Assembly: GCA_020891255.1 (NCBI GenBank)
Contig: BQFW01000008.1
Span: 2,294,001 to 2,358,000, forward strand
Source: Entomortierella parvispora E1425
Taxonomy: Eukaryota; Fungi; Mortierellomycota
Length of the DNA: 64,000 nucleotides
Direction: 5' to 3'
Below the pieces are notes generated by a model. The model did not search any database and had not been told where the DNA came from. It saw nothing but the letters and a program-made list of their open reading frames with translations. The position numbers were made by a program, and so were the translations under genes. This document shows, in pieces, positions 36,717 through 57,863 of this stretch (its first letter is position 1; every line of letters starts with the position of its first letter).

Positions 36717-36740
36717 ATTCTTCGGAAAAACAAAACAAAA

Positions 36741-36812
36741 AGCAGAATTCCGGGTTTGAACCGGAGACCTGCCGATCTGCAGTCGGCTGCTCTACCGCTG
36801 AGCTAATCCTGC
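36741..36812 (-). tRNA. tRNA-Cys(GCA), copy 2
   Basis: GCAGGATTAGCTCAGCGGTAGAGCAGCCGACTGCAGATCGGCAGGTCTCCGGTTCAAACCCGGAATTCTGCT folds as a cloverleaf with anticodon GCA, U73 and a downstream T-run. Confidence 0.95.
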
Positions 36813-36819
36813 TTGTTGA

Positions 36820-37427: not shown

Positions 37428-37431
37428 AATT

Positions 37432-37444
37432 TGGTAGCAAAGGA
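37432..37444 (+). other. Primer-binding site TGGTAGCAAAGGA
   Basis: 4 nt after the LTR. It is complementary to a tRNA ending GCUACCA (U72, A73), consistent with initiator tRNA-Met. Confidence 0.7.
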
Positions 37445-37577
37445 CAGTAGTAGTCCTACCGCCACGCCCATTCAAAGGACAGTAGCAGTCCTACCGCCAC
37501 GCCCATCCAAAGGACAGTAGCAGTCCTACCGCCACGCCCATCCAAAGGACAGTAGTAGTCCTACCGCCACGCCCATT
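37438..37577 (+). repeat. Four tandem 35-bp repeats in the retroelement leader
   Basis: CAAAGGACAGTAG(T/C)AGTCCTACCGCCACGCCCAT(T/C) x4. Confidence 0.95.
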
Positions 37578-37613
37578 CAAGACGACCACCTTCCCTACCC
37601 ACTTCCTTACATC

Positions 37614-38951: not shown

Positions 38952-41900
38952 GGCACTAGGCGAAGTCATCCTTCGAGTTGTTATTGGAGAACACACCTGC
39001 CGTTTCACAGCCACGGTTGTTCCCGACCTAGCTCACGATGTTTTCATTGGACTTCCATGGATGTTCCGCTATAAACCTCAAATCAATTGGGATCGCTACT
39101 CATTGACTTGGCAAGTCAATGGCCGAAAACACGAAGCCATCGCCAGATCTCAGCCCGCCAGTACCCTTCTGCAGAACGAACAGGTACCTGAACTTGCATA
39201 TGTGCAGACGAACGCACAGCGGTTCTTACACACCATGGCCGCCGATGATACACAAGAAGCAGGAATCGTTTGGTTAATGAAAACCCACGTTCCAGAACAC
39301 ACCCGAGCAGAAGAGCTCATGACCAACCCGGACCTGACAGTAGAACAGCAAGCTCAAATCGATGAGATAGTGAAGGAGTACCAGCAGGATGTATTCGCTC
39401 CACTCTCAGAGATGCCACCAGCCCGTCCCGGTTTCGATCACCAAATCCCCACTGGAGTAACAAGTCCTGTGGTCAAGAAGATATATAAGATGTCACCCCT
39501 CGAGCTCAAGACTCTCAAAGAACAGTTGGATGAGCTGTTACGGTTGGGGTACATCCAGCCCTCAACGTCGCCGTGGGCCGCACCAGTCCTGTTCGTCAAG
39601 AAGAAAGATGGAACATTGAGACTGTGCATCGACTATCGTGGACTCAACGCCGTCACGATCAAGAACAAGTATTTTCTCCCGCACACCGATGAATTTTTCG
39701 ATCGCATGCGAGGAGCCCGTTATTTCAGCAAGTTGGATCTCCAGCAGGGATATCATCAACTTCAAGTTGCAGAAGAGGACAGACCCAAGACAGCGTTCTC
39801 TACCCGATATGGACACTACGAGTACTGTGTCATGGCTTTTGGTCTTACCAACGCGCCCGCGTCGTTTCAAGCCTTCATGAATACGATTTTCAGTAAAGAG
39901 TTGGATCAGTTCGTTGTTGTCTACCTCGATGACATCCTGATCTACTCCAAGACTTTCGAAGAACACTTGAAGCACATCCGAACAGTGCTATCAACGCTGC
40001 GAAAACATCACCTACATGCCAAGCAAAGCAAATGTGCGTTTGGATTATCCAGCATCACCTTCGTCGGACATGTGATATCCTACGATGGAATTCAAGTGGA
40101 TCCAGCCAAGGTCGCAGTTGTCAAGAACTGGCCCACCCCAACCAACGTACAAGAGCTTCGTTCATTCATTGGATTTGTGAACTACCATCGCCGTCATATT
40201 TTCCACCATGCCGAAGTCACTGCTTGTCTTACAGACTTGTTGACCACTGGTCCAGGCCCAAACAAAGGAAAGTTACGACCCGTGCCTACTTGGGGCCCAG
40301 TTCAACAAGCCGCTTTCGATGGAATCAAAGAACTTCTAGCGACTACCCCTGTATTGTGCCTTGGACACCCCGATGAGCCGTACTATATGGAAACCGATGC
40401 ATCCGACATTGCCACAGGAGGAGTCCTTTATCAGATGCACGAAGGCAAAAGACACCCAGTTGCCTATGAGTCACGAAAACTTAAGCCAGCCGAGAAGAAC
40501 TACCCGGTCCATGAGAAGGAACTCCTCGCCATTGTTCACGCATGCAGAGCATGGCGCACGTTTATTCTTGGCGCCCCCGAAAACGTGGTCTACACTGACC
40601 ATGCAAGTCTACGATTTTTGTTGACCCAGCCACACCTGAGCCCGAGAATGACCCGTTGGGTTGAATTTTTGGCCCCCTACAACCTGTCGATCCAGTATAA
40701 GGCAGGAGCCACCAACATCGCTGCAGATGCGCTTTCCAGATTGCAAGTCAACAATGTGACAGCAGGACGTCACATCGACACTTGGGATTGGCCGTTGCTT
40801 GTCCCTGCATTTCTGGATGATGGTTCTTTTCCGCCCCATACCGATGGAGACACCAAGAAGAGAGTCCGCAAGGAGGCTCATAACTTCACGACTGATGACG
40901 ACGAATTGCGCTACATGGTTGAAGGAAGAGCAGTTCCCTTCGTTCCGTTTGCAGAGCGCGCAGATCGTCTCATTGAGTTGCACACCGACATTGGACATCT
41001 TGGAGAGTCTGGAACGTTTGATTTGGCCAAGACTCGCATGTGGTGGCCCAGTCTTCGAGCAGATATCAAAGCAGTAGTACGTGAATGCAAGCCGTGTCAA
41101 TTGGTCAAGCCCGGTGGTGACCGCTCTGTTGCACCGTTGCATCCATTGGCGCCAGCACGTCCGTTTGAGCGCTGGGGAATTGATTTTATTGGTCGCATGC
41201 CAGCCACCAAGAAAGGAAACCGTTGGATCATTACCGCAATCGACCATGCCACGAACTGGCCGATCGCAAGAGCCTTGCCAGAAGCAACCGCCGACGCCGT
41301 TGCTACTTTTCTCTATGAAGAGATCGTCTTACAGTTTGGCTGCCCTAGCGAGATCGTTAGCGACCGAGGAGCCAACTTCATGTCTGACGTTCTTCAACGC
41401 TATTTGGAGAAGCTGCACATCAAACACAAGGCTACGTCTGCTTACCATCCAAGGTCGAATGGAAAGTGTGAGCGTCTCAATGGTGTTATCGGACACATGT
41501 TGAGCAAGTATGTGGGTACACACATCCACAGCTGGGATCAGTACCTGCACCAGAGTCTGTTCGCTTGTCGCGTACACATCTCTCAGCGAACCAAGGTCAG
41601 CCCATTTCAACTTGTTTATGGACTTGAACCCCGTTTGCCGCAAGATCCAGTACGCCCATTCTTGTTTGATTTTCAAGATCAAGACGATTTTGCAGAACAT
41701 CGTCGCAAGACTTTTCGAGAAATCGACGCCCTCCGAGAAAAGCACCTGCAGGCCCAGCAGACCGCCGCAGATGATATGGCCGCACACCATGAAGAGACAC
41801 ACACGGTCACCGATCATAAGTTCGCAGTTGGTGATTTTGTCCTGGTCAAGAACTTCGGCCGTACGAAGCTTCAACCCCATTTTTATGGCCCGTTGGAAGT

Positions 41901-42495
41901 GATCCGTATTACGCCCTTGTCGACTTATCAGCTCCGCTTGGGAGATGGTGAGTTGAAGACGGACTTAGTACACCAAGACCGTCTTAAGCGTGCTTATCCG
42001 CCAGATGAAGCATCTGCACGCCGTGCTTGGGTCACTAAGACAAAGCACACCATGGAGCAAGCCAACGACAACTCTGACGATGGTCTTCCAATTGAAAGCC
42101 GCACTGAGGAGGAACAGCGCGTGGAGGAGGCCCTCGCTCTTAGAACCGCCAATGAAGATTACCTTGCCCGTCGCGATCAACTTGGCACTTACGAACCGCC
42201 TATGATGGGTTCCGCCGCTGAAGCTGCCCGCGTGTACAGACAGGCACTTGCTGCTTCTGCCCCGAAGCCTCGTCGCCGTGGCCAACGTACTCGCGAACCC
42301 AGAGTCAATCAGTTGCAGGCAGGCCGAGGACGGCCTGAAGCCTGTGGGGGGAGTGTCGTGAATCAGACTGCTTTTATCCCCGCCAGCTCCGCGTCTGATC
42401 ACATGACTTACGATCACCTGACCGCCGACACGCCTGATGAATGGACCCTTGTTGCGCGCCCTCATTGCACTTGTGCCGCGCGTCATCGTCGTTGA
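38930..42495 (+). CDS. pol: Pol (C-terminal protease, RT, RNase H, integrase), in the +1 frame relative to gag
   Basis: DVFIGLPW, SPWAAPVLFVKKKDGTLRLCIDYRGLN, YLDD, ETDAS, integrase H-H-C-C, WGIDF, SDRG, CERLN and GP(L) module. The open frame runs 142 bp into the 3' LTR. The start given is the approximate frame-switch point. Confidence 0.95.
42346..42353 (+). other. Polypurine tract GGGGGGAG
   Basis: Immediately precedes the TG of the 3' LTR. Confidence 0.85.
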
Positions 42496-42961
42496 CTATC
42501 ACCAGGTCGACTACCCTCAACCGTGTATACTCACGAACGGAGCATTTCATGTTTCTCCGACATTAACCTACCAACCGTTGCCAATCAAAAGCTTGTCTCC
42601 ACGCCGGTCGACCAAGCTCTTTGAAACCTCGGACGTTAGGGCCCCTATTCCAGAATAGTCATAAGCCCTTCACTATTTATTTCCATAGTGTCAGCAGTAT
42701 AGTCTCACTTCACTACCTTCAGTATATAAGTAGCTCTGTATCGAGACTTAGAACGGCATCCTTTCTTTGCCCTTCCATCTCGATTACAGGTAACCCTCTT
42801 GAGAACCCTATCAGTAGTAACACACAGAATATCTTATTAAACATATCCTTTCTTTGCCCTTCCATCTCGATTACAGTCAAGGTAGCTGACTGTGGTGCCC
42901 AGTGTAGAAGAACACGCTCGACACACCCTAAGGATCAGTCGTGATACCGAGAGTCACGACA
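42354..42961 (+). repeat. 3' LTR (608 bp)
   Basis: Matches the 5' LTR and is followed by the TTGA TSD. Confidence 0.95.
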
Positions 42962-43042
42962 TTGAAGCTAAAACTTATCTTCAATAATATTCAGCGGTTA
43001 GTGAAGTCACGTGACGGAATCACGTACGTTATTAAAAAAGAC

Positions 43043-43326
43043 GGTGACGAGCCCTGGCGCCGACCAGCGCTTACTGGCTTGTGTGCGTGGCCAGGTTCAC
43101 TTATCGACATTAGAAAAATGGGGAAGATCCATTTTTTGTAACATTTTACTCTTCTTTATTACACGGTGACGAGCCGTGGCATTTGTTGCGCGGGGATCCG
43201 GGGTCTTTGTTCGTCTGGACCACGCGGCTTTGCTCAGGTTGTAGATAGTTTGGTCTCGCACCTCACTTCTTTGGCTCGACATAGCAAATAAAATGTTGCA
43301 AAAAAAAAAAAAAAAAAAAAAAAAAA
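43043..43326 (+). repeat. ~280-bp A-tailed repeat unit; diverged direct copy of ~43327-43730
   Basis: Shared CCGACCAGCGCTTACTGG..GATCCATTTTTTGTAAC..GCAAATAAAATGTTG. This copy ends in a 27-nt A run. Confidence 0.8.
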
Positions 43327-43524
43327 GGTGACGAGCCCTGGCACCGTGGGAACAATGCCTCTGGTACGATCTTACCACCAGACACTTGCCAATGCGGAAA
43401 GCCTAACACCGACCACCATCAAGGCCTCTGCCCTGGTGCCCAAGACAATCCCACGCTGGCCGACCAGCGCTTACTGGCTTGTGTGCGTGGCCAGGTTCAC
43501 TTATCGACATTAGAAAAGATGGGG

Positions 43525-45877
43525 AAGATCCATTTTTTGTAACATTTTACTCTTCTTTATTACACGGCGACGAGTCGTGGTACTTGTTGCGCGGGGATCC
43601 GGGGTCTTTTGTTCGTCCAAACCACGCGGCTTTCCCTCAGGTTGTAGATAGTTTGGTCCCATACTTCACTTCCTTTGGCTCGACACAGCAAATAAAATGT
43701 TGTAAAAAAAATAAAAATAAAAATAAAAACTGAAAAAAAGCTGTCAATGAAAGGGAAAGGGAGAAGACCGCGGACAAATACCAAATGCACATGAATCTCT
43801 TCATCAAAACTCCCGTTTAATAAAACAACAACAATTGCTACTATTATTAATGGGAGGTGCGTGGAGTGTTCAAGAAGGGACTGGGGTCCAAGCTGTTGAT
43901 GAAGTGAATCAATTGATATTGTCTTGGCAACGCAATTGGAGTTATCTTGTGTGTTTGGTCGGCCTGTTACCACCGCGACTAAGGGGCATGTGTGGTGGCA
44001 AAAAGGGTCATTGGACGCGATCCTCTTAGCTTAACAATCAGTCACCGTGTCGCTGGATCCGCAACAGTTGTTGAAGGTGCCAAGGTTGCCGTGAGTACCG
44101 GCAAACGCGCAATCGTCCCCAGTCCAGTTTCCACCCGAGTTGGCACAGCAGTTTCTGCTAGCTCCGAAGTCGATGTTGGCTCCTTGCCAGCACTTGCAGG
44201 CCATCGCCGCGGCCATCTGAGCGCACACAATCATGATAATGGAGAGCTTCATATTGGATTCTTGAGAGTTGAGGAGAGGCGTGGGTAAGGACTCGGAGTG
44301 CCGTTGCAGGTCTGGAGTGTTGAGAGGGAGGATCAGATGTGTTTGGGTGCAAGATGGTGGGTATACGCGACCTCTTTATATACAGGAGAAGGGAGGCCAG
44401 ATTTGAACTTACGAGAGAAACAAATAGGAAATACCTCGTTTATGGGGGAAGGAACGAAGAGATGGTTATGCGCTATCCGGTTGCCGAAAGGGTCGTGGGA
44501 ATGCAGACAATGAGAAAAAAAAAAGATGGGCGCCAACTCTGCATCTCCGCTGCAGAGAGAAAATGGATCTTTGAATGCAATTCATGGTGTGACAAAACGT
44601 CGAGCACCATGGACCAAGAAGACCAAATTCAGAAGAGTATTAGGTTGCACAAAATATAAGAACCCAGGAAAGGATTTTTGTGAACCCTGCCCGATTGGGC
44701 TGGGGCAGAGAGAGAAACAAAGGTGCTACATACATGTACTGTGGCGATCCTGCGTGATTGGGCGCTAGGACACCATTGGCTCCTGCGCGATTGGGCTCGG
44801 GCGTTGACGCGATGTGACGTTGTCACCAGCCTGCTGGTTCGTGGGTGTTTGGCTCGGTGCGGGAAGTACAGTTACGGTGTCCTAGCTCCATTGAGTGCGT
44901 CAATGGCAGCACATGTTCTGCAATGATCGTCCTCAATGCAAAGGCCGTCGCCCTCAACGTAGTGCGAGGGGCTAGCTGTGTCTTTAGAGGCGCTCATGGA
45001 TGGAGTGGTGGAGTTGCGTGAGGGAATGGGCAATTCTTCTCAGAATGTGCTCGCTAAGCTGCATCATGCAGGAGGTTTGTCCCCTTGCCGTTGAAAAAAC
45101 CGAAACGGCCAGGGTACCTCCCTGCATTATGCGATTCTGCCTTGTCTGACCGTGACACTGACCCACTGACCTAGCCGTTGACACCGCCCGGAATGGAGAT
45201 TCTTTTTATCCCGCAGGTATGCAATCTCTTCATTGGCTCCTGCGCGATTGGGCTTGGGCTTGGGCGTTGACGCCCGGTGTTTGGTTCGGTGCGGGAAGTA
45301 CGGTGTCAATATTCAGTTCGTTCAGCTCCCTGTCTAGCTCCTCGTCGTCCATGTCGAGTGCGTCAGTGGCAGCACCTGTTCTATGCTGATCGTCCTCAAT
45401 GTAGAGGCCGTCGTCCTCAACGTAGTGCGAGGGGCTAGCTGTGTCTTTAGAGGCACTCATGGATGGAGTGGTGGAGTTGTGTGTGGGAATGGGCAATCCT
45501 TCTCAGAATGTGCTCGCTAAGCTGCATCATGCAGGAGGTCTGTCCCCTTGCCGTTGAAAAAACCGAAACGGCCAGGGTACCTCCCTGCATTCTGTGATTC
45601 TGCCTTGTCTGACCGTGACACTGACCCACTGACCTGGCCGTTGACACCGCCCGGAATGGAGACTCTTTTTGTCCCGCAGGTATGCAGTCTCTTCATTGGT
45701 TCCTGCGCGATTGGGCTCGGACTTGGGCGTTGACGCTGGGTATTTGGTTCGGTGCGGGATGATCGAGGGGGGCAGGGAAATGTCTTTTTGTCGTCTCATT
45801 GAATTGCTTGTCGTCCGATTCTGTTATTTGTCGTCCGATGTGGGCTCACTGTCGCCCGATTACTTACCTTAACTTCC
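43525..45877. repeat. Left arm (~2.35 kb) of a large inverted repeat
   Basis: Reverse complement of 47861-50021 plus 55411-55600. Mirrored ORFs have coordinate sums of 93737-93738. Confidence 0.95.
44031..44252 (-). CDS. Small secreted cysteine-rich protein (73 aa, 8 Cys after the signal peptide), left copy
   Basis: Hydrophobic signal peptide MKLSIIMIVCAQMAAAMA, then C-x-C-x13-CC-x11-C-x14-CC-x8-C. TATATAAA lies ~130 bp upstream (44375-44382). Confidence 0.8.
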   Translation of the reverse strand: MKLSIIMIVCAQMAAAMACKCWQGANIDFGASRNCCANSGGNWTGDDCAFAGTHGNLGTFNNCCGSSDTVTDC

Positions 45878-45999
45878 TCTTCCCATTTTCGCGGATATGG
45901 CCAATTCCTGTTTCTACGAAGAAAGTCGCCATGATTACAACGCAGTAAGTGGGGACACATGAGAATGGGTGATCGATGTTACTCTGAGCCAGCAATCTA

Positions 46000-46782
46000 A
46001 TGTACTCTCTTTCTCTCTTTGCACCGCCTATACGAATGGTGCAATTATTCCTTCAAGGCGAAAACGACGATAATGATGACCGCGAGCTACTCAGGAGACA
46101 TTCGCGACAAGAGACTCGCATCTCTTCCTTGGGAGTCATTCTAAGCGACATAGAGAGTTCCGACATTGAATGTGTCCACCGCGTATCGCGAGAAGTCCGG
46201 GATGCACAGTATATACTTCTTCTTAATGACGGAGGATATCTGTGTACATGCCTCCAACTCCAAAAAGTGGGTATTGTCTGCGGGCACTTTTTCTTGATGA
46301 TGCAGAAAGATCCAGCTTTCAAGTACCACATCAAATTAATCCGTCCGCGATGGTTCAATCATACATGTTAAGACAAAAACATTTCCGATCCTGCTCTTGC
46401 TTCTCGGCCTTTCGTGCCAGCTGCCCGTCACCGCGCCAACAGCCGCCCTACTGCGCCCGGCACCATGTACATGCAGCAGGTCTATCGGCTGTTTCGCACC
46501 ATAGACAATATCCCCGTTGTCGAGCCAAAAGAACTGAAGTAGCAGGCGCACACTGCAAGCCTTTACAGTCGATCGAGCAACATGTTGCGGCTGGCTGCAG
46601 ATAGTCCTGTACTACGCCAAACTTATATTCAGGAGATGGGAAGAGTAGAGGATGTGATGCAGGCGCAGCTTGAACTGAGGTTGACGCGACAGGCGGGTGA
46701 TCTGCCAATCTGGCCGTCCCAGGGAAAACAGTCCAAAAAAAAACACAGAACATTTCAACACAGAAAAATCGCCAGGATGTGA
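46000..46782 (+). pseudogene. Decayed SWIM zinc-finger fragment resembling the C-terminus of MULE/FAR1-type transposases
   Basis: YLCTCLQLQKVGIVCGHFF fits the SWIM CxC-x(n)-CxH pattern, followed by IRPRWF. The same frame continues through in-frame stops at ~46369 and ~46539. No DDE core seen. Confidence 0.6.
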
Positions 46783-47765
46783 ATTTTCTGTGTTTTTGAA
46801 TTTCATTTATTTCTCTGATCAAGATAACTGCGTGCTTGCAGCAAATACTTCTTAGGGAAGGAGCCTATACATTCTTGCTGAAGATGGAATGACTCAATTG
46901 AAGTCCAGTTGTTATCAGAAGCTGTTTCCAGCTTTGTCACTCACTAGCTTGAGAACAAATCGAGAGGTGCTTCGTTCGAGCAGCAATTGACATCCTTTGC
47001 ACTTTTGGGTCGGCTCCCTTTACGCTTTACCTCACTTAGGCAAAGACCAATTGAATATCCTGGCCCACAGATACAAGGTATATCCGCTCGATTTGGAGGT
47101 GGTGAAGACGATAGTGGCGATGACAATGAAAACAGTACGGCGACCTTTTCTGCGCTCGATCGAAGACTTCTCGTAGACTGTGGGACGGAGTCAGTTTTCA
47201 GTGAACTGCTTGGAAGTTTTGGCATCTTCACCGTGGACCGTGGCCCATTTTTTCTTTTGGGTTGAGCGGTAGTGGTGAATATTTCGAGGAAGGGGAAGGG
47301 GACGACAAGCACTCATCACCAACGTTGCTAACCTGAGGGTATGAACGAGCAGTCTTCACAGTTTTTTCCTTGGGGACAGCAGAAGAAGTCACTAGCTCAG
47401 GCAAATCCGTCGAGATGTCGCCTTTACCTCTCAGGTACCATGCGTATGCAATATAGTATCCATATGGATGCTATAGAAGTGCAGGGCTGGAAGAGAGACG
47501 CGTTTTTTTTTTCTGGTCTGAGTGGGAAAGTGTCGTTGGGCCGTGTGGCTGTAGATTTTCTGTGTTTTTGAAAAGACCGAGTCGGGAGAATAGAAGGAGA
47601 TGACCTGCTCTGGGGAAGCGCTCGAACAAAAGAATCAAATCCAGTGTTGAGATCGTGATGGGATCGAAAAAGGTCAAGACTAAAACAGCACAAACCTAGA
47701 CAGCTCAACGGAGAATAGAAAAAAAAGAAAAAAGAATTGTTCATGTGTGTGAGAGATGTACCACC

Positions 47766-47796
<31 letters not shown>

Positions 47797-47980
47797 GTCG
47801 TGTTGGATGGACAGGATGGACAAAGATCAATCCGGATGAGCTTCGCCAAGGCAAAGTTGGGGAAGTTAAGGTAAGTAATCGGGCGACAGTGAGCCCACAT
47901 CGGACGACAAATAACAGAATCGGACGACAAGCAATTCAATGAGACGACAAAAAGACATTTCCCTGCCCCCCTCGATCATC

Positions 47981-48960
47981 CCGCACCGAACCAAATACCC
48001 AGCGTCAACGCCCAAGTCCGAGCCCAATCGCGCAGGAACCAATGAAGAGACTGCATACCTGCGGGACAAAAAGAGTCTCCATTCCGGGCGGTGTCAACGG
48101 CCAGGTCAGTGGGTCAGTGTCACGGTCAGACAAGGCAGAATCACAGAATGCAGGGAGGTACCCTGGCCGTTTCGGTTTTTTCAACGGCAAGGGGACAGAC
48201 CTCCTGCATGATGCAGCTTAGCGAGCACATTCTGAGAAGGATTGCCCATTCCCACACACAACTCCACCACTCCATCCATGAGTGCCTCTAAAGACACAGC
48301 TAGCCCCTCGCACTACGTTGAGGACGACGGCCTCTACATTGAGGACGATCAGCATAGAACAGGTGCTGCCACTGACGCACTCGACATGGACGACGAGGAG
48401 CTAGACAGGGAGCTGAACGAACTGAATATTGACACCGTACTTCCCGCACCGAACCAAACACCGGGCGTCAACGCCCAAGCCCAAGCCCAATCGCGCAGGA
48501 GCCAATGAAGAGATTGCATACCTGCGGGATAAAAAGAATCTCCATTCCGGGCGGTGTCAACGGCTAGGTCAGTGGGTCAGTGTCACGGTCAGACAAGGCA
48601 GAATCGCATAATGCAGGGAGGTACCCTGGCCGTTTCGGTTTTTTCAACGGCAAGGGGACAAACCTCCTGCATGATGCAGCTTAGCGAGCACATTCTGAGA
48701 AGAATTGCCCATTCCCTCACGCAACTCCACCACTCCATCCATGAGCGCCTCTAAAGACACAGCTAGCCCCTCGCACTACGTTGAGGGCGACGGCCTTTGC
48801 ATTGAGGACGATCATTGCAGAACATGTGCTGCCATTGACGCACTCAATGGAGCTAGGACACCGTAACTGTACTTCCCGCACCGAGCCAAACACCCACGAA
48901 CCAGCAGGCTGGTGACAACGTCACATCGCGTCAACGCCCGAGCCCAATCGCGCAGGAGCC
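47981..48960 (+). repeat. ~463-bp tandem repeat, two full units plus a partial third, inside the arm (mirror at ~44778-45757)
   Basis: CCGCACCGA(A/G)CCAAA restarts at 47981, 48444 and 48876. Near-identical ORF pairs are offset by 463 bp. Confidence 0.85.
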
Positions 48961-49484
48961 AATGGTGTCCTAGCGCCCAATCACGCAGGATCGCCACAGT
49001 ACATGTATGTAGCACCTTTGTTTCTCTCTCTGCCCCAGCCCAATCGGGCAGGGTTCACAAAAATCCTTTCCTGGGTTCTTATATTTTGTGCAACCTAATA
49101 CTCTTCTGAATTTGGTCTTCTTGGTCCATGGTGCTCGACGTTTTGTCACACCATGAATTGCATTCAAAGATCCATTTTCTCTCTGCAGCGGAGATGCAGA
49201 GTTGGCGCCCATCTTTTTTTTTTCTCATTGTCTGCATTCCCACGACCCTTTCGGCAACCGGATAGCGCATAACCATCTCTTCGTTCCTTCCCCATAAACG
49301 AGGTATTTCCTATTTGTTTCTCTCGTAAGTTCAAATCTGGCCTCCCTTCTCCTGTATATAAAGAGGTCGCGTATACCCACCATCTTGCACCCAAACACAT
49401 CTGATCCTCCCTCTCAACACTCCAGACCTGCAACGGCACTCCGAGTCCTTACCCACGCCTCTCCTCAACTCTCAAGAATCCAAT

Positions 49485-49706
49485 ATGAAGCTCTCCATTA
49501 TCATGATTGTGTGCGCTCAGATGGCCGCGGCGATGGCCTGCAAGTGCTGGCAAGGAGCCAACATCGACTTCGGAGCTAGCAGAAACTGCTGTGCCAACTC
49601 GGGTGGAAACTGGACTGGGGACGATTGCGCGTTTGCCGGTACTCACGGCAACCTTGGCACCTTCAACAACTGTTGCGGATCCAGCGACACGGTGACTGAT
49701 TGTTAA
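49485..49706 (+). CDS. Small secreted cysteine-rich protein, right copy (protein identical to the left copy)
   Basis: Identical 73-aa translation. TATATAAA at 49355-49362. Confidence 0.8.
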   Translation: MKLSIIMIVCAQMAAAMACKCWQGANIDFGASRNCCANSGGNWTGDDCAFAGTHGNLGTFNNCCGSSDTVTDC

Positions 49707-50021
49707 GCTAAGAGGATCGCGTCCAATGACCCTTTTTGCCACCACACATGCCCCTTAGTCGCGGTGGTAACAGGCCGACCAAACACATAAGATAACTCCA
49801 ATTGCGTTGCCAAGACAATATCAATTGATTCACTTCATCAACAGCTTGGACCCCAGTCCCTTCTTGAACACTCCACGCACCTCCCATTAATAATAGTAGC
49901 AATTGTTGTTGTTTTATTAAACGGGAGTTTTGATGAAGAGATTCATGTGCATTTGGTATTTGTCCGCGGTCTTCTCCCTTTCCCTTTCATTGACAGCTTT
50001 TTTTCAGTTTTTATTTTTATT

Positions 50022-50702
50022 CAGCCTCGACAACTGGGCCACTTTTTCGAAAAAAGTGACCATCCTTCGTTGCACAGAAACGGTGGCTTCACTCAATTTT
50101 TTGGTGGCCACCACTTGGTCGCCACTCAAAATAAAGGAGTGGTGCAAAGGTGTCAACAAACCTGCAGCTCCACTCTTTTTCACTCTTTTTCACTCTTTTT
50201 CACTCTTTTTCACTCTTTTTGAGTGATTCCTGCAGGAAAATGGTGATTTGTCCCAAAAAGGATCGCATCCACCAAAAAAAAAAGTGGTCGCCAGTAGTCC
50301 CACCAAAAAAAAGTGGACCTCACTTGGGAAAGGAGTGGTCGGAACATTTTGTGCGACCCAAAAGCAGAGACAAAAAGCGCGTGTGCGGTGCGGTCCAGCG
50401 TCTCTCCTCTCGAGCAGCATGCGCATGCCCATACCATGGGCCACACTAGCTTCAAGCGTGCCGTGGTCTATCTGTTCACGCCTGTTTGTCCACGGATGTT
50501 TAATTGCTTGTCTGCCCTTTTTTTTTTTTTTGTTTCCCGTCTTTTTCCAATCCTGGCCCAAGTCGACATTCTCTCCCAGTGAAATCGTATCATGGACGCG
50601 CAAGAGCAAGCCCTCCCTCCTCAACAACCCGAGGCTGATCCTGAACTCGTTCCCCAACCTCCACAAAACTTATGGCACCCACTGGTAGCGGGACTTGAAG
50701 AC
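50022..50702. repeat. Left TIR (681 bp) with 5 x CACTCTTTTT at 50171-50220
   Basis: Mirror of 54721-55401 (coordinate sum 105423). The match ends at GACTTGAAGAC. Confidence 0.93.
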
Positions 50703-51041
50703 CACTTTCAATTGCCAATTGGTGAGCTCCCTCCAGTTCAAGCATGCATCGCTGCAAACAGGCTTGCCCTCGCCGCAGTTCCTATCAGAGTTGCTAGGAA
50801 TCAATCGATTGACAACAATTTTTTTGCATTGGAGGACAGGGCCACTGGAGACACTGGTCCTCGCTTCTCTAAATGTCAAGTTCAGAACTGTCCTTACAGA
50901 ATTCGCTCTGATTTTGGCTTGAACATTCGACTGCGTCACATCAGGAACACCCACAGAGATTTGATCGATGCAGTTGTTGCCTTCCGAATCGCTCAAGGTG
51001 ACCCAGCTTTGGATCAAACACATCTCTTACCTGATCAATAA
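50592..51041 (+). CDS. 149-aa ORF with a BED-like zinc finger, starting inside the TIR
   Basis: CQVQNC-x15-HIRNTH, a C2H2/BED-like arrangement. Confidence 0.55.
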   Translation: MDAQEQALPPQQPEADPELVPQPPQNLWHPLVAGLEDHFQLPIGELPPVQACIAANRLALAAVPIRVARNQSIDNNFFALEDRATGDTGPRFSKCQVQNCPYRIRSDFGLNIRLRHIRNTHRDLIDAVVAFRIAQGDPALDQTHLLPDQ

Positions 51042-51303
51042 ACCATGTGAAGCCCTTCACATTTTTTCCTCGATGTTTTTGTGGCCATGGTGTGCATGCA
51101 TGCCCCAGACCAAGAAAAATCGCCCAAGCTTATCGCAAGCACTGTGAACCTTCCCGTTTCCTCCATGCTGTGGGAACTCTTGACTTCTTCCAATGCTCTT
51201 GTCTTGAATTTTCCTTTCCTCTTCCTCTTTCCTTTTTTTTCCTCCTTATTTTCTACCTTTTTCTTTTCTCTATAACATCTATAGTACTACCATTTCTCTC
51301 ACG

Positions 51304-54300
51304 ATGGACTACGACCCATATAGTCATCATTTCAACGATGATGATGATGCTGTCCAGACAGTACAGACCGATCCTCCTCCTCCTCATCCTCCTCCTCACC
51401 CTCCTTCCAACATCGAAACTGAGGCTACCCAAGAGCCACAGACTGGTCCACGTCTCCGTCCTTATCCTCCTTCCAGCATCGATACTGAAGATGTCCAAGA
51501 GCCACAGACTGGTCCTCGTCCTCGTCCTCATCCTCCTTCCAACATCGATAATGAGACCATCCAAGCACCCCGGACTCATCCTCCTCCTCGCCTTCATCCT
51601 CATCCTCATCCTCGTCCTCCTTCCCACACCGATAATGAGGCTGTTCAAGCACCACAGACTCGTCCTCATCCCTATCTACCTTCCCACCATCAATATAACC
51701 CACTAGTTCCATCCCAACCTCGAGGTCCTCAGTACCCATACTCCCAACCTCATGAGCTTCACCATGCATACCATATCCCTGGACAGTATCAATTTCCTCA
51801 ATATCACTCTCAAGACCCAAATCAACCTGTCTACCACCCACCAGGCCACTTCCATCCATATTCAGATGTACCATACAGTCCTTACCCAGGGATGCATCAC
51901 ACCGAATCACACCATACTATGCAGTATTCTACTCTTCCCATTCATCCACAGTATCGCCCTCCTCCCGGAATGCCCTATGAGCACTACAGAGTACCTCCAA
52001 CTATTCCAAAGAAACGTCCTGCGGATCAAATCCGTGGTCCAACTCCAGGTGCACCGAGGGCAATTGCAGATATACACCTTGGGGCTTCGTCCCGAGCCGT
52101 ATCACCAACTGCCCGAGAGGCTGAAGTTGAGACAACTCCAATGGAACTTTGGAATGCTCGACAAAGGAATCTGAGTAGAACTTCATCGGTGGCGTCCATT
52201 TCACGAGAGCCATCAATGATGTCCGAAGTGGAAATGTACACTCAGGAACAAACGGGCGATAGTACATCGTCACCTGTACTCCTTCGGTCAACCCCAGCCC
52301 TTTCCGAACCTCCACCAAATGGCGGAGGTATATCCATGACTATAGCAGACTACGAGAAAACACTGAAAGTGGGCCAGCTCCCACCATATAGTGTGTGCAA
52401 GGAGGCCAAGTCTATGCTCGCACATATACCCATAAGGCAGATCGATCTTACGATTCCAGGGGCATGGCACCGTCATTTCTTTGAGAAGGTGTCAACAACA
52501 AATCCTGCCACAATCAACCAGGTTGATCTCCAGCCCACCATCAACGCCCCAACCGTTGATCCATACACAGGGAAAAAAGTTTCCTTATGTCTCTGACATT
52601 CCAAAGGCATGGTTCTTTTGCCGAGTCAAGACTAGTGAGAACCGCAGATGTCACTACCATAAGCCAGGATCTCAAGGTACAGGCATGCGTACGGCACATG
52701 TTACAAGGAACCATCCAGAAATACTCTCAGCATTGACAACATTCCGAAAAAATCAAGGATTCGAAGGTAATCTATCTCAATGAATTACTCATAGGTGTAC
52801 ACTATCACATTTTTAACCTATCAAACGTCAATTCATGTAGATGTGGAAGCAGGAAACGCGGAAGGGTATTCAGTATTCTATGACCAGACAATGCCAAAGT
52901 CCTCGCAGCTGACCAAGATATTGCCGAGTACTCAAGAAGCTATACAGCTATTCACTACTCACAGCGCGATTCAACAGAGACTCCCGTTCTCAGTGGTTAC
53001 TGGCCCGTATGCCTCGGGCGTCGCTAGAATTCTCGGATTTTCATACCCGTCGCCTTCTCCTCAAACCGTCGGAAAGTGTGTATTCAAGCTTTACGGAAAT
53101 GCTCGCGCACGACTGGACAAAATATTTGCTGCAGGAGTCGTTCGAGGCTGCTTTACCTACGACGGTTGGAAGAGATTTGGCCGGAAATTCATCGGGATCA
53201 CGTTCCATTACATCGAGAAAAAGACCTACAAACCCAAATCTCTGGCGATTGGTTTTGAGGAATACTTTGGTTCTGGGACGGCTGTTGACATCCAGGATAT
53301 AGTAGGTAAGTGTGGATGGTAGCTCTGCTTGCCGTCGTCTTTGGCCCTGGCTGCAGCTTGATCTAATACAAATCACAACTTCTAGAGCGAACCCTTTTAT
53401 TTTTGGGGGCTAAAAGGCAAGGCCTTTTGCAGTACTACCGACTCCGCCAATGTCATGAAAGCAACAACTCGACTTTTTAATCAACGATGACGAAACTTTT
53501 GGTCCGTGGTTTCCCTGTGCCTGTCATAAACTTCAACTGTTTATCCGCAACATCATCGAAGCAACGGGTGATATAAAGACTATTGTCCGCAAGGCTGAAG
53601 AACACAACAAGGCGTTCCTATCAAGCGGAGGATCAACTCTCCTATGCAAAGCGCGATCCGACTTAAAACAAAAGGAACTAAAGGCTCTCACATTCACTGT
53701 TACGCGATGGAACAGCAGATTCATGATGATAGAGCGCCTTCTGGAGCTACGTGAAGCAACAGACCTGGTCAAGGCGCGAGCGCAGATGCCTACTGCCACG
53801 CAAATGGAGAAGACATTTTGGCGAGAATATGGTAGTCAGCTTCTGAGTAACGAAGAGTTCGATGTTCTCAAGGAGCTTCTTACTGTCCTGCGACCCACCG
53901 CAGAATTGACAGTAGCAATGTCCTCCAACGACCCTGTCATCACAGGCTTATACCCCAAGATCCGCAAGGTCCTGAGTTCCGACCCTCTGTTGACGATTCC
54001 TATTGTGGAGCGGTTCCAAGAAAAGTTTGTAAGGCAGCTCGCAGGCCTCTTCTCCACAGCTGATATGGCCGATGAAGTCCTCATTGCCACATACCTCCAC
54101 CCTACCAATATTAAGAATGATGGATTTTTCACTGGATTGGAAGGAGAAAGACTGAAACAGCTTGCAGAGGACCTTATTCTTGCAACGGCTGATCCTGAAA
54201 GTCCACTGCGCACAGGAATCGACTTTGGGGATAAGTCTACTGAGGATCTCACCACGCTCCTGTCGATGGAGCTGCAGAGTTATATCGAACTTGCCCAATC

Positions 54301-54598
54301 GGAACCGTTGAAAGATTACAACAAACCTCATGAGTGGTGGGCAGTGCATGGAGGCATGTTCAAGTACCTGTCCCAGTTTGTTGTCATCTTCTTTAGTATA
54401 CAAGCCTCCTCAGCGGCAAGTGAAAGGCTCTTTAGCGTCTCTGGATGCGTTCTTACAGCAAAAAGAACGCGTCTTGGTATCCTCAAGCTTAAGGCATTGG
54501 TTTTGCTGGCTACCTGGGACACCGGCTACAAGATAAAACTGGACGATTACTATAATGATGGCGATGACGATATCGACATATTCCAAAAATTTGGATAG
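51304..54598 (+). pseudogene. hAT transposase with a long Pro/His-rich N-terminus, probably two introns and two apparent +1 frameshifts
   Basis: BED-like WFFC..C..H..H, FTYDGW, TTDSANVM, FPCACHKLQL, TRWNS, and C-terminal dimerisation motif WW..FKYL..SIQASSAASERLFS. Frame changes occur at homopolymers near 52575 and 53475. Confidence 0.85.
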
Positions 54599-54720
54599 CA
54601 ACATTGGGTGAGAGCTCTCAAGATATAAGACTTAGCTGAGTAAACATTAGGAGAAAAATGACGAGAAGTCCTTCCTTAACATTAGTTGAATATGTACTGC
54701 ACAGCGATGCATAAAAAATA

Positions 54721-55401
54721 GTCTTCAAGTCCCGCTACCAGTGGGTGCCATAAGTTTTGTGGAGGTTGGGGAACGAGTTCAGGATCAGCCTCGGGTTGTT
54801 GAGGAGGGAGGGCTTGCTCTTGCGCGTCCATGATACGATTTCACTGGGAGAGAATGTCGACTTGGGCCAGGATTGGAAAAAGACGGGAAACAAAAAAAAA
54901 AAAAAGGGCAGACAAGCAATTAAACATCCGTGGACAAACAGGCGTGAACAGATAGACCACGGCACGCTTGAAGCTAGTGTGGCCCATGGTATGGGCATGC
55001 GCATGCTGCTCGAGAGGAGAGACGCTGGACCGCACCGCACACGCGCTTTTTGTCTCTGCTTTTGGGTCGCACAAAATGTTCCGACCACTCCTTTCCCAAG
55101 TGAGGTCCACTTTTTTTTGGTGGGACTACTGGCGACCACTTTTTTTTTTGGTGGATGCGATCCTTTTTGGGACAAATCACCATTTTCCTGCAGGAATCAC
55201 TCAAAAAGAGTGAAAAAGAGTGAAAAAGAGTGAAAAAGAGTGAAAAAGAGTGGAGCTGCAGGTTTGTTGACACCTTTGCACCACTCCTTTATTTTGAGTG
55301 GCGACCAAGTGGTGGCCACCAAAAAATTGAGTGAAGCCACCGTTTCTGTGCAACGAAGGATGGTCACTTTTTTCGAAAAAGTGGCCCAGTTGTCGAGGCT
55401 G
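54721..55401. repeat. Right TIR (681 bp)
   Basis: Reverse complement of 50022-50702. Mirrored ORF translations are identical. Confidence 0.93.
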
Positions 55402-55600
55402 ATTTTTATTTTTATTTTTTTTACAACATTTTATTTGCTGTGTCGAGCCAAAGGAAGTGAAGTATGGGACCAAACTATCTACAACCTGAGGGAAAGCCGC
55501 GTGGTTTGGACGAACAGTGACCCCGGATCCCCGCGCAACAAATACCACGACTCGTCGCCGTGTAATAAAGAAGAATAAAATGTTACAAAAAATGGATCTT
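55402..55600. repeat. Outer end of the right arm of the large inverted repeat (beyond the hAT insertion)
   Basis: Reverse complement of 43525-43720. Confidence 0.9.
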
Positions 55601-55999
55601 TGTTCACGCTTCAAGTTTCAGCCATGGGTCTAAGCCCGACCTGTTTTTCATCCCACATAGTATTTAAAACACGTCAATTTTGAAAAACAAAAACAAGCCA
55701 GTTACAGTAAAGCGCCTAGCAAATACAGCTTCCAGAGACGGTGCCGTGAGGTCGAGGGTTCGATCTCAGCTCGGTGCGCCCTCGTTTGCGCTAGCCTCTC
55801 GAGTTAGAGGCGGTAGTTTGTATCACTACCTACAGCACTTGCTGATATTTATCCCATGTGGATTAGTTACCAGGAGGCACTGTGTCAAAGTGCTAAGTAT
55901 ACAGGGTGGTCCAGCCCACTGAAAACAGTTGTCGGTCATATGCAGGATCATGTTCTATGTGAAGCGGTCGGGCACTAACAGTCGGACAATAAACAAGAA

Positions 56000-56263
56000 A
56001 TTTTCCGAGGATACACCGAGGCCCTCTCCGAGGCCGTCCAGCAAGCAAGCAAGGTGTTCCAGGCGGTGGAAGGCGGTTACTGCGAGGAGGTCTCGATCTT
56101 ATTAGCAGGCGACGAGTCTGCCAACTGGTCGCATAGGGACGTGGTAGTACGAGCGGACGGGAGACTCGATTCAACAGACCGCGCCATAGGTACTACTCTG
56201 GTTGCTGGTGTGGAAGGGGATGTTATGACAAAACATGACCCTCGTGTGGCTCGGGTACTGTAG
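56000..56263 (+). pseudogene. Possible orphan coding exon or gene fragment
   Basis: Open, coding-like frame FRGYTEALSEAVQQASKVF..VARVL* with no clear start or recognised domain. Confidence 0.25.
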
Positions 56264-56412
56264 AAAGATCAAAGTTGCAATAAAAAAAAAATACTGCTAC
56301 CCATAAGCCATCCTTGTTGCGCGTCTTCGAGGATAGGGTGTTCATGCAGAGTGGACAAGAGGATAAGGTTTCTAAATGGTCTTATAAGTATTTATGATGT
56401 ACATGTATGGCT

Positions 56413-57863
56413 CTACAGGCATTCGATCCACTTAGTGCTAATGGATTTTGTGGAGGCGGCACCGTTTGCGCTATAAACAGCAATCAAACGTTCAGTGGCA
56501 AGCAAGTCAATCGCCTTCAAATCCTCCTGTGATGTGGCGGTGGCATCTTTCGAGGGTGCCGATTTCAACAAACGAGAAGTGCACTAAGAAGATCATAAGA
56601 GATGTAAGTACAGTGAGCTAAAGGGAGGGGTGGTAGAAGTGACAAAAGGTAACTTTTCCAATGAGGTAATTTCCTTACCAATTTGATCCCATAGAGACCA
56701 CGGACATGGTCTTTGCACAGTTCAATGACACGGCAGAACTGCTTCAACGCCAATTGATAGTTTTCTTGTGTGTAAAGGATCTCGGCGTACTTAAGATGGA
56801 AAATGTGGTTCTGAGATTGGAGCATGAGGACCTCTTCCATGCAGAATGCTGCTTGTCCATACCTAAGAGTATACCACATGAACAGCGAAATGAGAATGCA
56901 AGCCCAAAAGAATAGTTGACAATACCTCCACATGTCCCGATATTTTTCATATGATTTCTCCGGAAAGCTTACATCAATTCTTCAAGGTACAGGTCGGCCA
57001 ATTGCAACCAGCCCTCAAAATCCGTGTAGTTGATATCCAGGTACTTGACCAGAGCAGAGATGGCATCTGTTGGCAATCCCATAGCCCTCAACAACATGAC
57101 CTGACGCTTGGCAGCAAGCTATATATAAGGAATGGTGAAAGTAGAGGGAAATAGAGAAAATTGTTCAATATCGCGTTCATGCTTCTCTCCTTTTGGACGA
57201 GCCTGATCCATATTTTCACGATCCTCTCCTTACGACGTTGGTCTCGTCCTCTTCAAGAATTGCTTTGTAGATTGCCGCTGCCTCTGTCAACTTTCCGACA
57301 GCTTCAAATTTCATGCCATTCAAGCGATTCACACGCGCTGATCCTGGGAACTTTGCTTCAAGGGCTTGAATGCATTTCTAGATGTAGGAGCAAAGGGCAG
57401 TGAGTAAAAGCTGGCGCAAGATATACAAACTCTGTCGTAAAGCTAGTCGGTCGATAAGAGCATTAAACTATTGAAATGAGTATGTAGGAGATTTTTGTTA
57501 TCTTACATGGGCCAAAACATCATCGCCCACGTCCAACGCGGCAATGGCAACTTGCTCATATACGAGCCAGGCTAGCAGTGATAGAGCAAAAGAAAATAGG
57601 ATCGAGGGGTCAGTAAAGTCGTTTTATAGGAATATCGCCATTAGAATATTCCCTTTGTGCTTCGAAAGTTAGTTGGGCTGAAGACGTATATTGAAGCTAG
57701 GGTGAAGTGGAGGTGAGATGATGGTGTCCTGTAAGTTACCATCAGCATCAAGTTTCATAACCGCGCCAGAGTCGATGAGTGGCTTTCCAAGACGGACGAC
57801 GACGTCGGGTTTGCGCTCGGCTGAGGCGCGCAGGTCCTGGAGTAATTTGGCGGCGTTGACCAT
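56413..57863 (-). CDS. EMC2: ER membrane protein complex subunit 2 (TPR protein), multi-exon
   Basis: MVNAAKLLQDLRASAERKPDVVVRLG, YEQVAIAALD, FCMEEVLMLQ..HLKYAEILYT, ALKQFCRVIELC..VRGLYGIKL|CTSRL. Stop at 56413. Confidence 0.85.

What the first reader, a model, noticed from the sequence alone, without database searches (positions are those of the whole stretch)
43525..55600. Giant inverted repeat carrying a secreted Cys-rich gene in both arms around a SWIM/MULE relic: candidate cargo-carrying foldback transposon
Seen: ~2.35-kb arms (43525-45877 and 47861-50021 plus 55411-55600) that are nearly identical, around a 1983-bp spacer. Each arm holds a complete, TATA-bearing, outward-pointing gene for the same 73-aa secreted protein plus a 463-bp tandem repeat. 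The spacer holds a decayed SWIM-finger fragment. Established: MULEs have long TIRs, SWIM-containing transposases and capture host genes (Pack-MULEs), but cargo normally lies between the TIRs. Inference: an element, or a replication-derived inverted duplication, in which an effector-like gene is part of the TIR itself. This would double dosage, allow arm-to-arm gene conversion and potentially generate hairpin RNA. I found no TSD at the outer ends, so mobility is unproven.
Basis: partly seen in the sequence, partly recalled or inferred. Interest (0 to 1): 0.85.

Follow-up and report, generated by a model that had tools for sequence, protein, structure and literature searches.

The report
Transposon-seeded mirror duplication of secreted-protein gene
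A soil fungus carries a real 2.35-kb mirror-image duplication that grew outward from the two ends of a dead Mutator-type jumping gene and doubled a very strongly expressed small secreted-protein gene; it is a local rearrangement of a known kind, not a new mobile element.

Summary
Arms 43525-45877 and 47861-50021 + 55411-55600 match at 2346 of 2351 positions around a 1983-bp spacer. Each arm carries the same 73-aa secreted 8-Cys gene pointing outward, and a 463-bp tandem array.

The foldback-transposon reading does not hold.
- Illumina contigs of the same genome give the arms twice the spacer's depth, so there are only these two copies.
- The outer boundary of arm A lies inside an older repeat unit that runs on uninterrupted, and there is no TSD.
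- A second isolate has the spacer family and the innermost ~90-107 nt of the arms, but not the rest.

The spacer is an internally deleted MULE; its SWIM ORF matches MULE transposases. The inner ~117 nt of each arm look like its TIRs. Best reading: fold-back priming or a replication U-turn at those TIRs copied 2.2 kb of left flank to the right side. A 5.4-kb multicopy hAT then inserted into the copy; arm A is its empty site.

A run from the same sample that behaves like RNA-seq shows both gene copies transcribed at very high depth, with no hairpin transcript.

In passing: the gene's only relatives are in Cordycipitaceae insect pathogens, a candidate horizontal transfer. The scan has noted other palindromes elsewhere in this genome.

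The parts
43059..43326 (+). Unit 1 of an older ~400-bp tandem duplication in the left flank, ending in a 27-nt poly(A) run. It serves as outgroup for the outer end of the arms.
   Evidence: 92-95% identical to unit 2, and the homology crosses the point equivalent to the arm boundary
43459..43729 (+). Unit 2 of the same duplication. The arm A boundary (43525) lies inside it, which shows arm A is in its original context.
   Evidence: alignment A1: arm B homology starts at AAGATCC (43525), while units 1 and 2 remain homologous for ~65 nt further left
43525..45877 (+). Arm A, the original copy
44031..44252 (-). Small secreted 8-Cys protein gene, copy A (73 aa, intronless ORF). The transcript is about 43797-44332, mapped over from copy B.
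44893..45759 (.). 463-bp tandem array, 1.9 copies, cut short at 45759/45760. No expression was seen in the mirrored copy in arm B.
   Evidence: X2 depth is 0 over the mirrored array in arm B
45761..45877 (+). Putative left TIR of the MULE. It starts with a G run and has four TGTCG[TC]C motifs at 20-21-nt spacing. In a second isolate the inverted repeat continues 16 nt further, to 45893.
   Evidence: motifs, array truncation; X3 shares this part and the 16 nt in both orientations; X1 has other contigs with the motif
45878..47860 (+). Spacer: internal remnant of an internally deleted, non-autonomous MULE. It is single copy at this identity and weakly transcribed at 46451-47598.
46000..46371 (+). 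Relic ORF for the C-terminal SWIM (CxC...CxH) region of a MULE transposase. The DDE domain is missing.
47861..47977 (-). Putative right TIR of the MULE, the mirror of 45761-45877
47861..50021 (-). Arm B, proximal part (the copy)
49485..49706 (+). Small secreted 8-Cys protein gene, copy B. The transcript start is at 49404/49405, and depth falls between the 49704-49857 and 49858-50011 bins.
50022..55401 (+). Nested hAT-type transposon with CAG...CTG ends and perfect 681-nt TIRs (50022-50702 / 54721-55401). It adds 5389 bp in all: an element of 5380-5381 bp plus an 8- or 9-bp target duplication. About 12-fold TIR depth suggests roughly six copies in the genome.
53723..54598 (+). ORF with the hAT C-terminal dimerisation domain
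   Evidence: PF05699, E 5.3e-13
55402..55600 (-). Arm B, distal part beyond the hAT insertion, including the second copy of the target duplication. It holds 4 of the 5 arm mismatches.
55600..55601 (.). Novel junction between the end of the copied arm and the right flank, with no homology or TSD

Best explanation
This is a local, non-mobile inverted duplication seeded by the terminal inverted repeats of a dead Mutator-like element (MULE). An internally deleted MULE lay next to a highly expressed small secreted-protein gene. It consisted of a left TIR at about 45761-45877, a SWIM relic and 3' region at 45878-47860, and a right TIR at 47861-47977. After a break or fork stall at its right side, the right TIR paired with the left TIR. 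This could be fold-back of resected single-stranded DNA or a replication U-turn. DNA synthesis then ran outward through 2.2 kb of left flank (tandem array, promoter, gene, part of an older repeat). At 43525 it was joined without homology to the right flank at 55601. The result is a MULE core as the loop, and TIR plus flank as the arms, with arm B as the copy. Later a member of a multicopy hAT family inserted into arm B about 315 bp past the gene. Both gene copies are transcribed. Shown: the anatomy, the two-copy state, that arm A is the original, the MULE identity of the spacer, the order of events, and expression of both copies. Inferred: that the inner 117 nt are the MULE's TIRs, and that they primed the copying.
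For: 1. The arms are 99.8% identical over 2351 nt, with 1.98-fold depth relative to the spacer in independent Illumina contigs. 2. Arm A is continuous with an older repeat unit whose paralogue spans the boundary, and arm B is not. 3. The spacer ORF is homologous to the SWIM region of MULE transposases. 4. The 463-bp array homology stops abruptly at 45759/45760. It is followed by a G-rich start and four TGTCG[TC]C motifs at 20-21-nt spacing. The 12-mer TTGTCGTCCGAT occurs 4 times in the window, all in these ends, against 0.35 expected. 5. A related complete MULE from a metagenome (L003) likewise has GGG-initiated TIRs with TTGTCAAC-type repeats. 6. A second isolate (X3) has spacer-like copies at roughly 90-94% identity. 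It carries the inner part of the arms and a further 16 nt in both orientations (joint 45893->47859 on opposite strands). Its depth is essentially 0 (one bin at 13.3) over 48164-50165, the rest of arm B. 7. Other contigs of the same genome share the TIR motif with different surroundings (loose ends at 47899/47934). 8. Fold-back priming at natural inverted repeats near a break is an established route to inverted duplications in yeast (PMC10622511, PMC6103520). 9. The hAT insertion is present in arm B and absent in arm A, which places it after the duplication.
Against: - The outer terminus of the proposed TIR was not confirmed by aligning several genomic copies, because I had only this window; metagenome scans found no copies.
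- No 9-10-bp MULE target duplication can be shown. The model predicts that the right one was lost.
- Neither the inner nor the outer junction shows microhomology.
- In yeast the pathway usually gives hairpin-capped or dicentric chromosomes, whereas here synthesis must have stopped after 2.2 kb and been rejoined.
- The right TIR lacks 16 nt that the family has in X3, so the exact priming point is unclear.
- The X1 and X3 evidence comes from assembler contigs, not reads. The spacer contig overlaps arm A by only 15 nt, below the tool's 31-nt bridging rule.
Confidence: 0.6

Rival explanations
1. An ordinary inverted segmental duplication in which the MULE relic is only a bystander in the spacer. 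The inner arm ends are not TIRs, and the breakpoints were set by chance or microhomology.
For: No microhomology or TSD is demonstrable. The TIR terminus is not proven. The scan's earlier notes list several other kilobase palindromes in this genome, which suggests a general tendency that need not involve transposons.
Against: The second isolate has the inner ~90-107 nt of the arms joined in both orientations to a spacer-like element while lacking the rest of the arms. The array is truncated exactly where the motif-bearing segment begins. The regular subterminal motifs are typical of transposon ends.
Confidence: 0.2
2. Transposase-driven alternative transposition, of the sister-chromatid or reversed-ends type known for maize Ac/Ds, produced the inverted duplication.
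For: Inverted-repeat alleles made by alternative transposition are documented, for example Ac killer 1 (PMC13635294, bioRxiv 10.1101/2020.01.07.897926). Active MULE and hAT families exist in this genome.
Against: The distal junction at 55600/55601 joins flank to flank. There is no transposon terminus or new target duplication there, which alternative transposition would leave.
Confidence: 0.08
3. A mobile foldback or long-TIR MULE in which the secreted-protein gene is part of the TIR.
For: Long, near-identical inverted arms around a MULE transposase relic.
Against: There are only two arm copies in the genome. There is no TSD. The outer end lies inside an uninterrupted older repeat unit. The arms are absent from the second isolate although the core family is present. 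No copy was found in metagenome scans.
Confidence: 0.04
4. An assembly artefact of the Nanopore assembly: a false palindrome.
For: The genome was assembled from 1D Nanopore reads (PMC8759367). The two 1-nt indels between the arms lie in homopolymers and may be polishing errors.
Against: Arm depth is 2-fold in Illumina contigs. Both SNP alleles at 49788 are present in a second run. One arm has the hAT-filled site and the other the empty site. A 1983-bp unique spacer is covered by one Illumina contig.
Confidence: 0.02

Closest known systems
Fold-back (inverted) duplications primed at natural inverted repeats next to a DNA break, as dissected in budding yeast (PMC10622511; PMC6103520; PMC10164571)
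   Same: A pre-existing inverted-repeat pair sits at the centre. The sequence between the repeats becomes the loop. One flank is copied in inverted orientation outward from the repeat. The new arms are identical at birth.
   Different: Here the seeding repeats are transposon TIRs ~2 kb apart. The copied tract is only 2.2 kb and was rejoined to the other side, so there is no dicentric chromosome or large rearrangement. It is a natural, fixed event in a Mortierellaceae fungus, and its pathway genes are untested.
Mu killer and Ac killer 1 of maize: natural inverted duplications associated with Mutator or Ac elements (PMC3440606; PMC13635294)
   Same: A kilobase-scale inverted repeat involving a partially deleted DNA transposon and its TIRs, generated by a rearrangement rather than by normal transposition.
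   Different: In the maize cases the transposon sequence itself is the duplicated arm, and read-through gives a hairpin RNA that silences the family. Here the transposon is the loop and host flank is the arm. The genes fire outward, and no hairpin transcript is seen.
Pack-MULEs and foldback (FB) transposons
   Same: MULE-derived core; host gene physically associated with long inverted repeats.
   Different: The cargo lies outside the presumed transposon termini, not between them. There is a single locus, no target duplication and no sign of mobility.
DUP-TRP/INV-DUP and related template-switch rearrangements mediated by inverted repeats in human genomes (PMC11293582)
   Same: An inverted-repeat pair mediates a U-turn of synthesis, followed by a second, non-homologous junction.
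   Different: The scale is kilobases rather than tens to hundreds of kilobases. There is no triplicated segment.

Membership tests
   Arm contigs have 1.98 times the depth of the single-copy spacer, which accounts for the two arms only. No further copy was found in the window or in metagenome scans.
   The flanks at 43524 and 55601 are unrelated.
   The arm A boundary lies inside repeat unit 2, which continues colinear with its paralogue unit 1 across the boundary.
MULE (Mutator-like element), for the core 45761-47977 | Transposase of the MULE/SWIM type | tested here: met
   ORF 46000-46371 matches the C-terminal SWIM region of proteins carrying Pfam MULE PF10551. Only the C-terminal relic is left.
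MULE (Mutator-like element), for the core 45761-47977 | Terminal inverted repeats of about 50-250 bp shared by family members | tested here: inconclusive
   Regular TGTCG[TC]C motifs and truncation of the array at 45760. X3 and X1 contigs share the inner part. The terminus was not defined by a multi-copy alignment.
MULE (Mutator-like element), for the core 45761-47977 | 9-11-bp target duplication | not testable with these tools
   The right flank has been replaced by the inverted copy of the left flank. A pre-duplication allele would be needed.
Pack-MULE | Captured host gene fragment lies between the TIRs | tested here: not met
   The gene (44031-44252 / 49485-49706) lies ~1.5 kb outside the putative TIRs, and it is a complete, expressed gene.
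hAT superfamily (nested insert 50022-55401) | hAT dimerisation domain in the transposase | tested here: met
   PF05699, E 5.3e-13, on 53723-54598.
hAT superfamily (nested insert 50022-55401) | 8-bp target duplication | tested here: inconclusive
   Compared with the empty site in arm A, the insert adds 5389 bp. That is 8 bp if a T/A pair is counted into the element, and 9 bp if the element is strictly CAG...CTG.
hAT superfamily (nested insert 50022-55401) | Short TIRs (about 10-30 bp) | tested here: not met
   The TIRs are 681 nt and perfect, and they include the start of the first ORF. This is an atypical member, also noted elsewhere in this genome.
Fold-back inverted duplication at an inverted-repeat pair | Pre-existing inverted repeats at the centre, the loop equal to the sequence between them, one flank copied outward, and a non-homologous distal junction | tested here: met
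   That the central repeats existed beforehand rests on the second isolate.
Fold-back inverted duplication at an inverted-repeat pair | Initiating break and hairpin or U-turn intermediate | not testable with these tools
   This is a historical event and needs experimental reconstruction.

The most novel reading that the evidence does not exclude
The duplicated gene may have been horizontally exchanged between Cordycipitaceae insect pathogens and the insect-associated genus Entomortierella. It then became one of the most abundant transcripts and was amplified by a transposon-seeded palindrome. On this reading, the many palindromes noted in this genome are a recurrent route for raising the dosage of secreted-protein genes.
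Probability: 0.2. Interest if true: 0.65.

Novelty: new member of a known kind. Interest (0 to 1): 0.4.

Why it matters
This is a clean natural example in which the order of events can be read from the sequence: an older tandem repeat, a MULE insertion and its decay, an inverted duplication seeded at the TIRs, then a hAT insertion with its empty site preserved in the other arm. It shows how a dead transposon can still reshape a genome, by offering an inverted-repeat pair at which repair or replication turns back, and in doing so double a very strongly expressed secreted-protein gene. It removes a tempting but unsupported claim of a new class of cargo-in-TIR transposon. It also gives a testable idea for the other kilobase palindromes that the scan noted in this fungus: look for transposon TIRs at their centres.

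Tried and rejected
- Exact-sequence look-up of the 73-aa protein in public assemblies found nothing on record.
- Pfam on the arm, spacer and hAT ORFs hit only the hAT dimerisation domain. The SWIM ORF was negative in Pfam and was resolved only by phmmer plus Pfam on the full-length hits.
- Rfam on 42900-57000 at E<=1 gave no RNA family. A tRNA-looking stretch near 55740-55790 is not a tRNA by ARAGORN or Rfam.
- The metagenome scan for the TIR motif and the scan for relatives of the relic protein gave no usable locus.
- Contigs encoding the best relic homologues (L003, L007-L010) show almost no DNA similarity to the core and lack its end motif. They could not define the TIR terminus.
- The AlphaFold model of the secreted protein had mean pLDDT 45.8, so I ran no fold search. 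The ESM Atlas gave only weak, mixed leads.
- The bacterial promoter/terminator scan is irrelevant for a fungus and found nothing.
- I looked for remains of the truncated array, or of any left-flank sequence, in the right flank 55601-57600 and found only an 18-nt chance match.
- The protein tree cannot say whether the Entomortierella pair is nested within Cordycipitaceae, because it is unrooted and has open forks.


Full report

Yes. The repeat finder gives four collinear inverted pairs. Once the segment 50022-55410 is removed they merge into one alignment of arm A 43525-45877 with arm B 47861-50021 + 55411-55600. It has 2351 columns, 5 mismatches and two 1-nt indels, both in homopolymer runs. 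The spacer is 1983 bp.

- Each arm contains the same 73-codon ORF, at 44031-44252 on the minus strand and 49485-49706 on the plus strand. Both point away from the centre.
- Each arm has a 463-bp tandem repeat of 1.9 units at 93% identity.
- No direct repeat flanks the outer ends.

A repeat of this length and identity is far beyond chance.

**2. Organism and data**

Earlier notes of this scan name the genome Entomortierella parvispora. What I could check is consistent with that.

- The genome announcement for strain E1425 reports 38.7 Mb in 19 contigs plus a mitochondrion and GC 49.4%. It describes Nanopore and HiSeq DNA, and RNA-seq from the same cured culture (PMC8759367).
- The window has 49% GC. 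The scan counts 20 pieces for the genome.
- An SMC1 ORF in the window has its closest named relative in a Mortierellaceae species. It is only 47% identical to a hypocrealean SMC1 fragment.

Three coded runs hold the locus: X1 and X2 from one sample, and X3 from another sample of the same labelled organism.

**3. Not an artefact, and only two copies**

Read laying on 45700-50300 shows the following for X1.

- One contig of 1924 nt at depth 82.6 covers the spacer (45863-47754).
- Six contigs that lie wholly in arm B have depths of 144-193, mean 163.8, which is 1.98 times the spacer. The arm sequence is therefore present twice per genome and nowhere else at high identity.
- The hAT TIR contig starts exactly at 50022 and has depth 963.8, or 11.7-fold. 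That suggests about six elements if each has two TIRs.

X2 is labelled 'DNA?' but behaves like RNA-seq.

- Depth is 141,000-198,000 over 49396-49857.
- Depth is 0 over 47702-49087, and 4-12 over parts of the spacer.
- Illumina adapter sequence abuts contig ends at 49404/49405, which I read as the transcript start.

In X2 the only SNP that separates the two gene copies (49788: T in arm B, C in arm A) shows both letters, with 29.5% C. So two distinct copies exist and both are transcribed.

An X2 contig (49910-50051) runs from arm B into the hAT end with 30 nt on the far side, one short of the tool's 31-nt bridging rule.

Caveat: these are assembler contigs. The spacer contig overlaps arm A by only 15 nt, and the right inner junction was not listed because a poly(A) run at 47755-47805 was skipped.

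**4. Which arm is the original?**

Left of arm A lies an older tandem duplication: unit 1 at 43059-43326 and unit 2 at 43459-43729, 92-95% identical. A three-way alignment shows that arm B's homology begins at 43525, in the middle of unit 2. Units 1 and 2 stay homologous for a further ~65 nt to the left.

Arm A is therefore continuous with its ancestral surroundings. Arm B is the copy, and 55600/55601 is a new junction. This alone argues against the outer ends being transposon termini.

**5. What is the centre?**

The ORF 46000-46371 has the CxC...CxH SWIM pattern followed by an RW motif.

- phmmer against 1.84 billion representatives finds 253 relatives, best E 1.6e-18.
- Full-length hits (P0025, P0045, P0078) carry the Pfam MULE domain several hundred residues upstream of the matching part; in P0078 a FAR1 DNA-binding domain and a Ulp1 protease domain lie further upstream.
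- Some of the best hits lie on fungal genome contigs and on a complete metagenomic MULE with 60-nt TIRs.

Only the C-terminal ~100 residues are left here, 120 bp from the arm boundary. The element is therefore an internal-deletion derivative.

**6. Are the inner arm ends its TIRs?**

Four observations say so.

- (a) The 463-bp array is cut short at 45759/45760. Units 0 and 1 continue AGTAC... there, but unit 2 continues with unrelated sequence that opens with a G run.
- (b) From there to the arm end lie four TGTCG[TC]C motifs at 45789, 45809, 45829 and 45850, spaced 20-21 nt apart. The 12-mer TTGTCGTCCGAT occurs four times in the window, all in these two ends, against 0.35 expected.
- (c) X1 has other contigs that share a 36-nt piece of this segment and continue with further copies of the motif (loose ends at 47899 and 47934).
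- (d) X3 has spacer-like sequence at roughly 90-94% identity (45891-46738 and 47571-47728, at high depth). It has a contig whose upstream 1.6 kb is unlike arm A. It has the inner ~90 nt of the arms. It also has a joint, '45893 to 47859, opposite strands', which means that in X3 the inverted repeat runs 16 nt further inward at both ends. Yet X3 has essentially no depth over 48164-50165, the remainder of arm B; one bin shows 13.3.

So a MULE with ordinary ~110-130-nt TIRs exists independently of the 2.2-kb arm extension. I could not confirm the outer terminus by a multi-copy alignment. Two metagenome scans found nothing, and the distant relatives I fetched do not share the motif.

**7. Mechanism**

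The anatomy is a pre-existing inverted-repeat pair at the centre, its interval as the loop, one flank copied outward, and a homology-free distal junction. This is what fold-back priming or a replication U-turn at inverted repeats produces. The pathway is established experimentally in yeast (PMC10622511; PMC6103520; PMC10164571) and inferred for human rearrangements (PMC11293582).

I propose that a break or stalled fork at the right of the MULE exposed the TIRs. The right TIR paired with the left one, synthesis copied 2.2 kb of left flank, and the end was joined to the right flank at 55601. The original right-hand target duplication, and possibly some flank, was lost.

- Transposase-driven alternative transposition (as for Ac killer 1, PMC13635294) is less likely, because the distal junction has no transposon end or target duplication.
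- The maize Mu killer locus (PMC3440606) is the nearest MULE-related precedent. There the transposon itself forms the arms and makes a hairpin RNA. Here it is the loop.

**8. Later events and age**

The segment 50022-55401 has CAG...CTG ends, 681-nt perfect TIRs and an ORF with the hAT dimerisation domain. Against the empty site in arm A it adds 5389 bp. That is an 8-bp duplication if a T/A pair is counted into the element, and 9 bp if not. It therefore inserted after the duplication.

Four of the five arm mismatches, and a complex TTT/AC change, lie in the 191 bp distal to this insertion (P = 2e-4 for mismatches, 5e-3 if counted as events). At two of these sites arm B keeps the state of outgroup unit 1, so not all of them are copying errors in arm B.

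This fits arm-to-arm gene conversion homogenising the proximal 2.16 kb while the hAT insertion isolated the distal stub. Error-prone synthesis near the junction, or conversion with unit 1, cannot be excluded with so few sites.

**9. The gene**

The product has an 18-residue signal-like N-terminus and a 55-residue mature part with eight cysteines.

- It has no Pfam family, no confident structure (pLDDT 45.8) and only weak Atlas leads.
- A profile search of 5.8 billion proteins found only eight relatives. One is on a metagenome contig (80% in the mature part). Five are named as Cordycipitaceae: Beauveria bassiana (two), Cordyceps javanica, Akanthomyces lecanii and Lecanicillium saksenae, four of them on contigs of 0.5-6.4 Mb. 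Two are unnamed Logan assemblies.
- Mature-part identity to B. bassiana is 76%, inside the range seen among the named ascomycete and unnamed Logan relatives themselves (64-89%). Nucleotide identity is 74%. SMC1 is only 47% identical between the window and a hypocrealean fragment.
- An unrooted tree places the Entomortierella pair on the Beauveria/Cordyceps/Akanthomyces side of a 97/93 split, but cannot show nesting.

This is a candidate horizontal transfer between distant fungi. I found no paper on it.

**10. Verdict**

The transposon interpretation is not supported. Dosage doubling is supported by expression of both copies, and hairpin RNA is not. The structure is a new natural member of a known kind of rearrangement. 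The scan has noted several other kilobase palindromes in this genome, which I did not examine.

Noticed in passing
44031-44252 and 49485-49706; loci L001, L011, L013: Besides one metagenome contig, the only relatives of the 73-aa secreted protein among 5.8 billion proteins are five proteins named as Cordycipitaceae insect pathogens (Beauveria, Cordyceps, Akanthomyces, Lecanicillium) and two from unnamed Logan assemblies. The mature part is 65-76% identical to ours, as close as those relatives are to one another. This is a candidate horizontal gene transfer between Ascomycota and Mucoromycota.
   Followed up: partly
49396-50011 (run X2): The run listed as 'DNA?' from the same sample behaves like RNA-seq. 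It gives the secreted-protein gene a summed depth of 141,000-198,000, against 4-12 for spacer transcripts, so the gene looks like one of the most abundant transcripts. A little read-through enters the hAT element.
   Followed up: partly
50022-50702 and 54721-55401: The 681-nt perfect TIRs of the hAT element include the upstream region and the first ~37 codons of its first ORF (ATG at 50592). The right end therefore carries an inward-facing duplicate of that gene start. TIR depth suggests about six copies in the genome. Another note of the scan (s1-185161) reports a hAT with 413-bp TIRs elsewhere.
   Followed up: partly
51304-52596: Inside the hAT element there is a 430-aa proline- and histidine-rich ORF with 66-84-nt internal repeats and no Pfam family, upstream of the transposase part. 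It is possibly a second element gene.
   Followed up: no
43059-43326 and 43459-43729: Two ~270-bp units, the first ending in a 27-nt poly(A) run. Each is preceded by a GGTGACGAGCCCTGGC motif, and one has a 115-bp insert. This may be a SINE-like retroposon pair or a simple tandem duplication.
   Followed up: no
36820-42965: An LTR retrotransposon directly left of the locus whose LTRs are identical over at least the 300 nt reported by the repeat finder (36820-37119 vs 42354-42653), next to a tRNA-Cys gene (36740-36813). With the hAT and the MULE, this makes the neighbourhood a cluster of young transposon insertions.
   Followed up: no
46451-47598: Low-level transcription of the MULE remnant's 3' region in run X2 (contigs 46451-46707 and 46796-47598, depth 4-12). 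The strand is unknown.
   Followed up: no
43550-43609 / 55517-55575: Differences between the arms cluster in the 191 bp that the hAT insertion separates from the rest of arm B. This may be a natural experiment on how much contiguous homology arm-to-arm conversion needs.
   Followed up: partly
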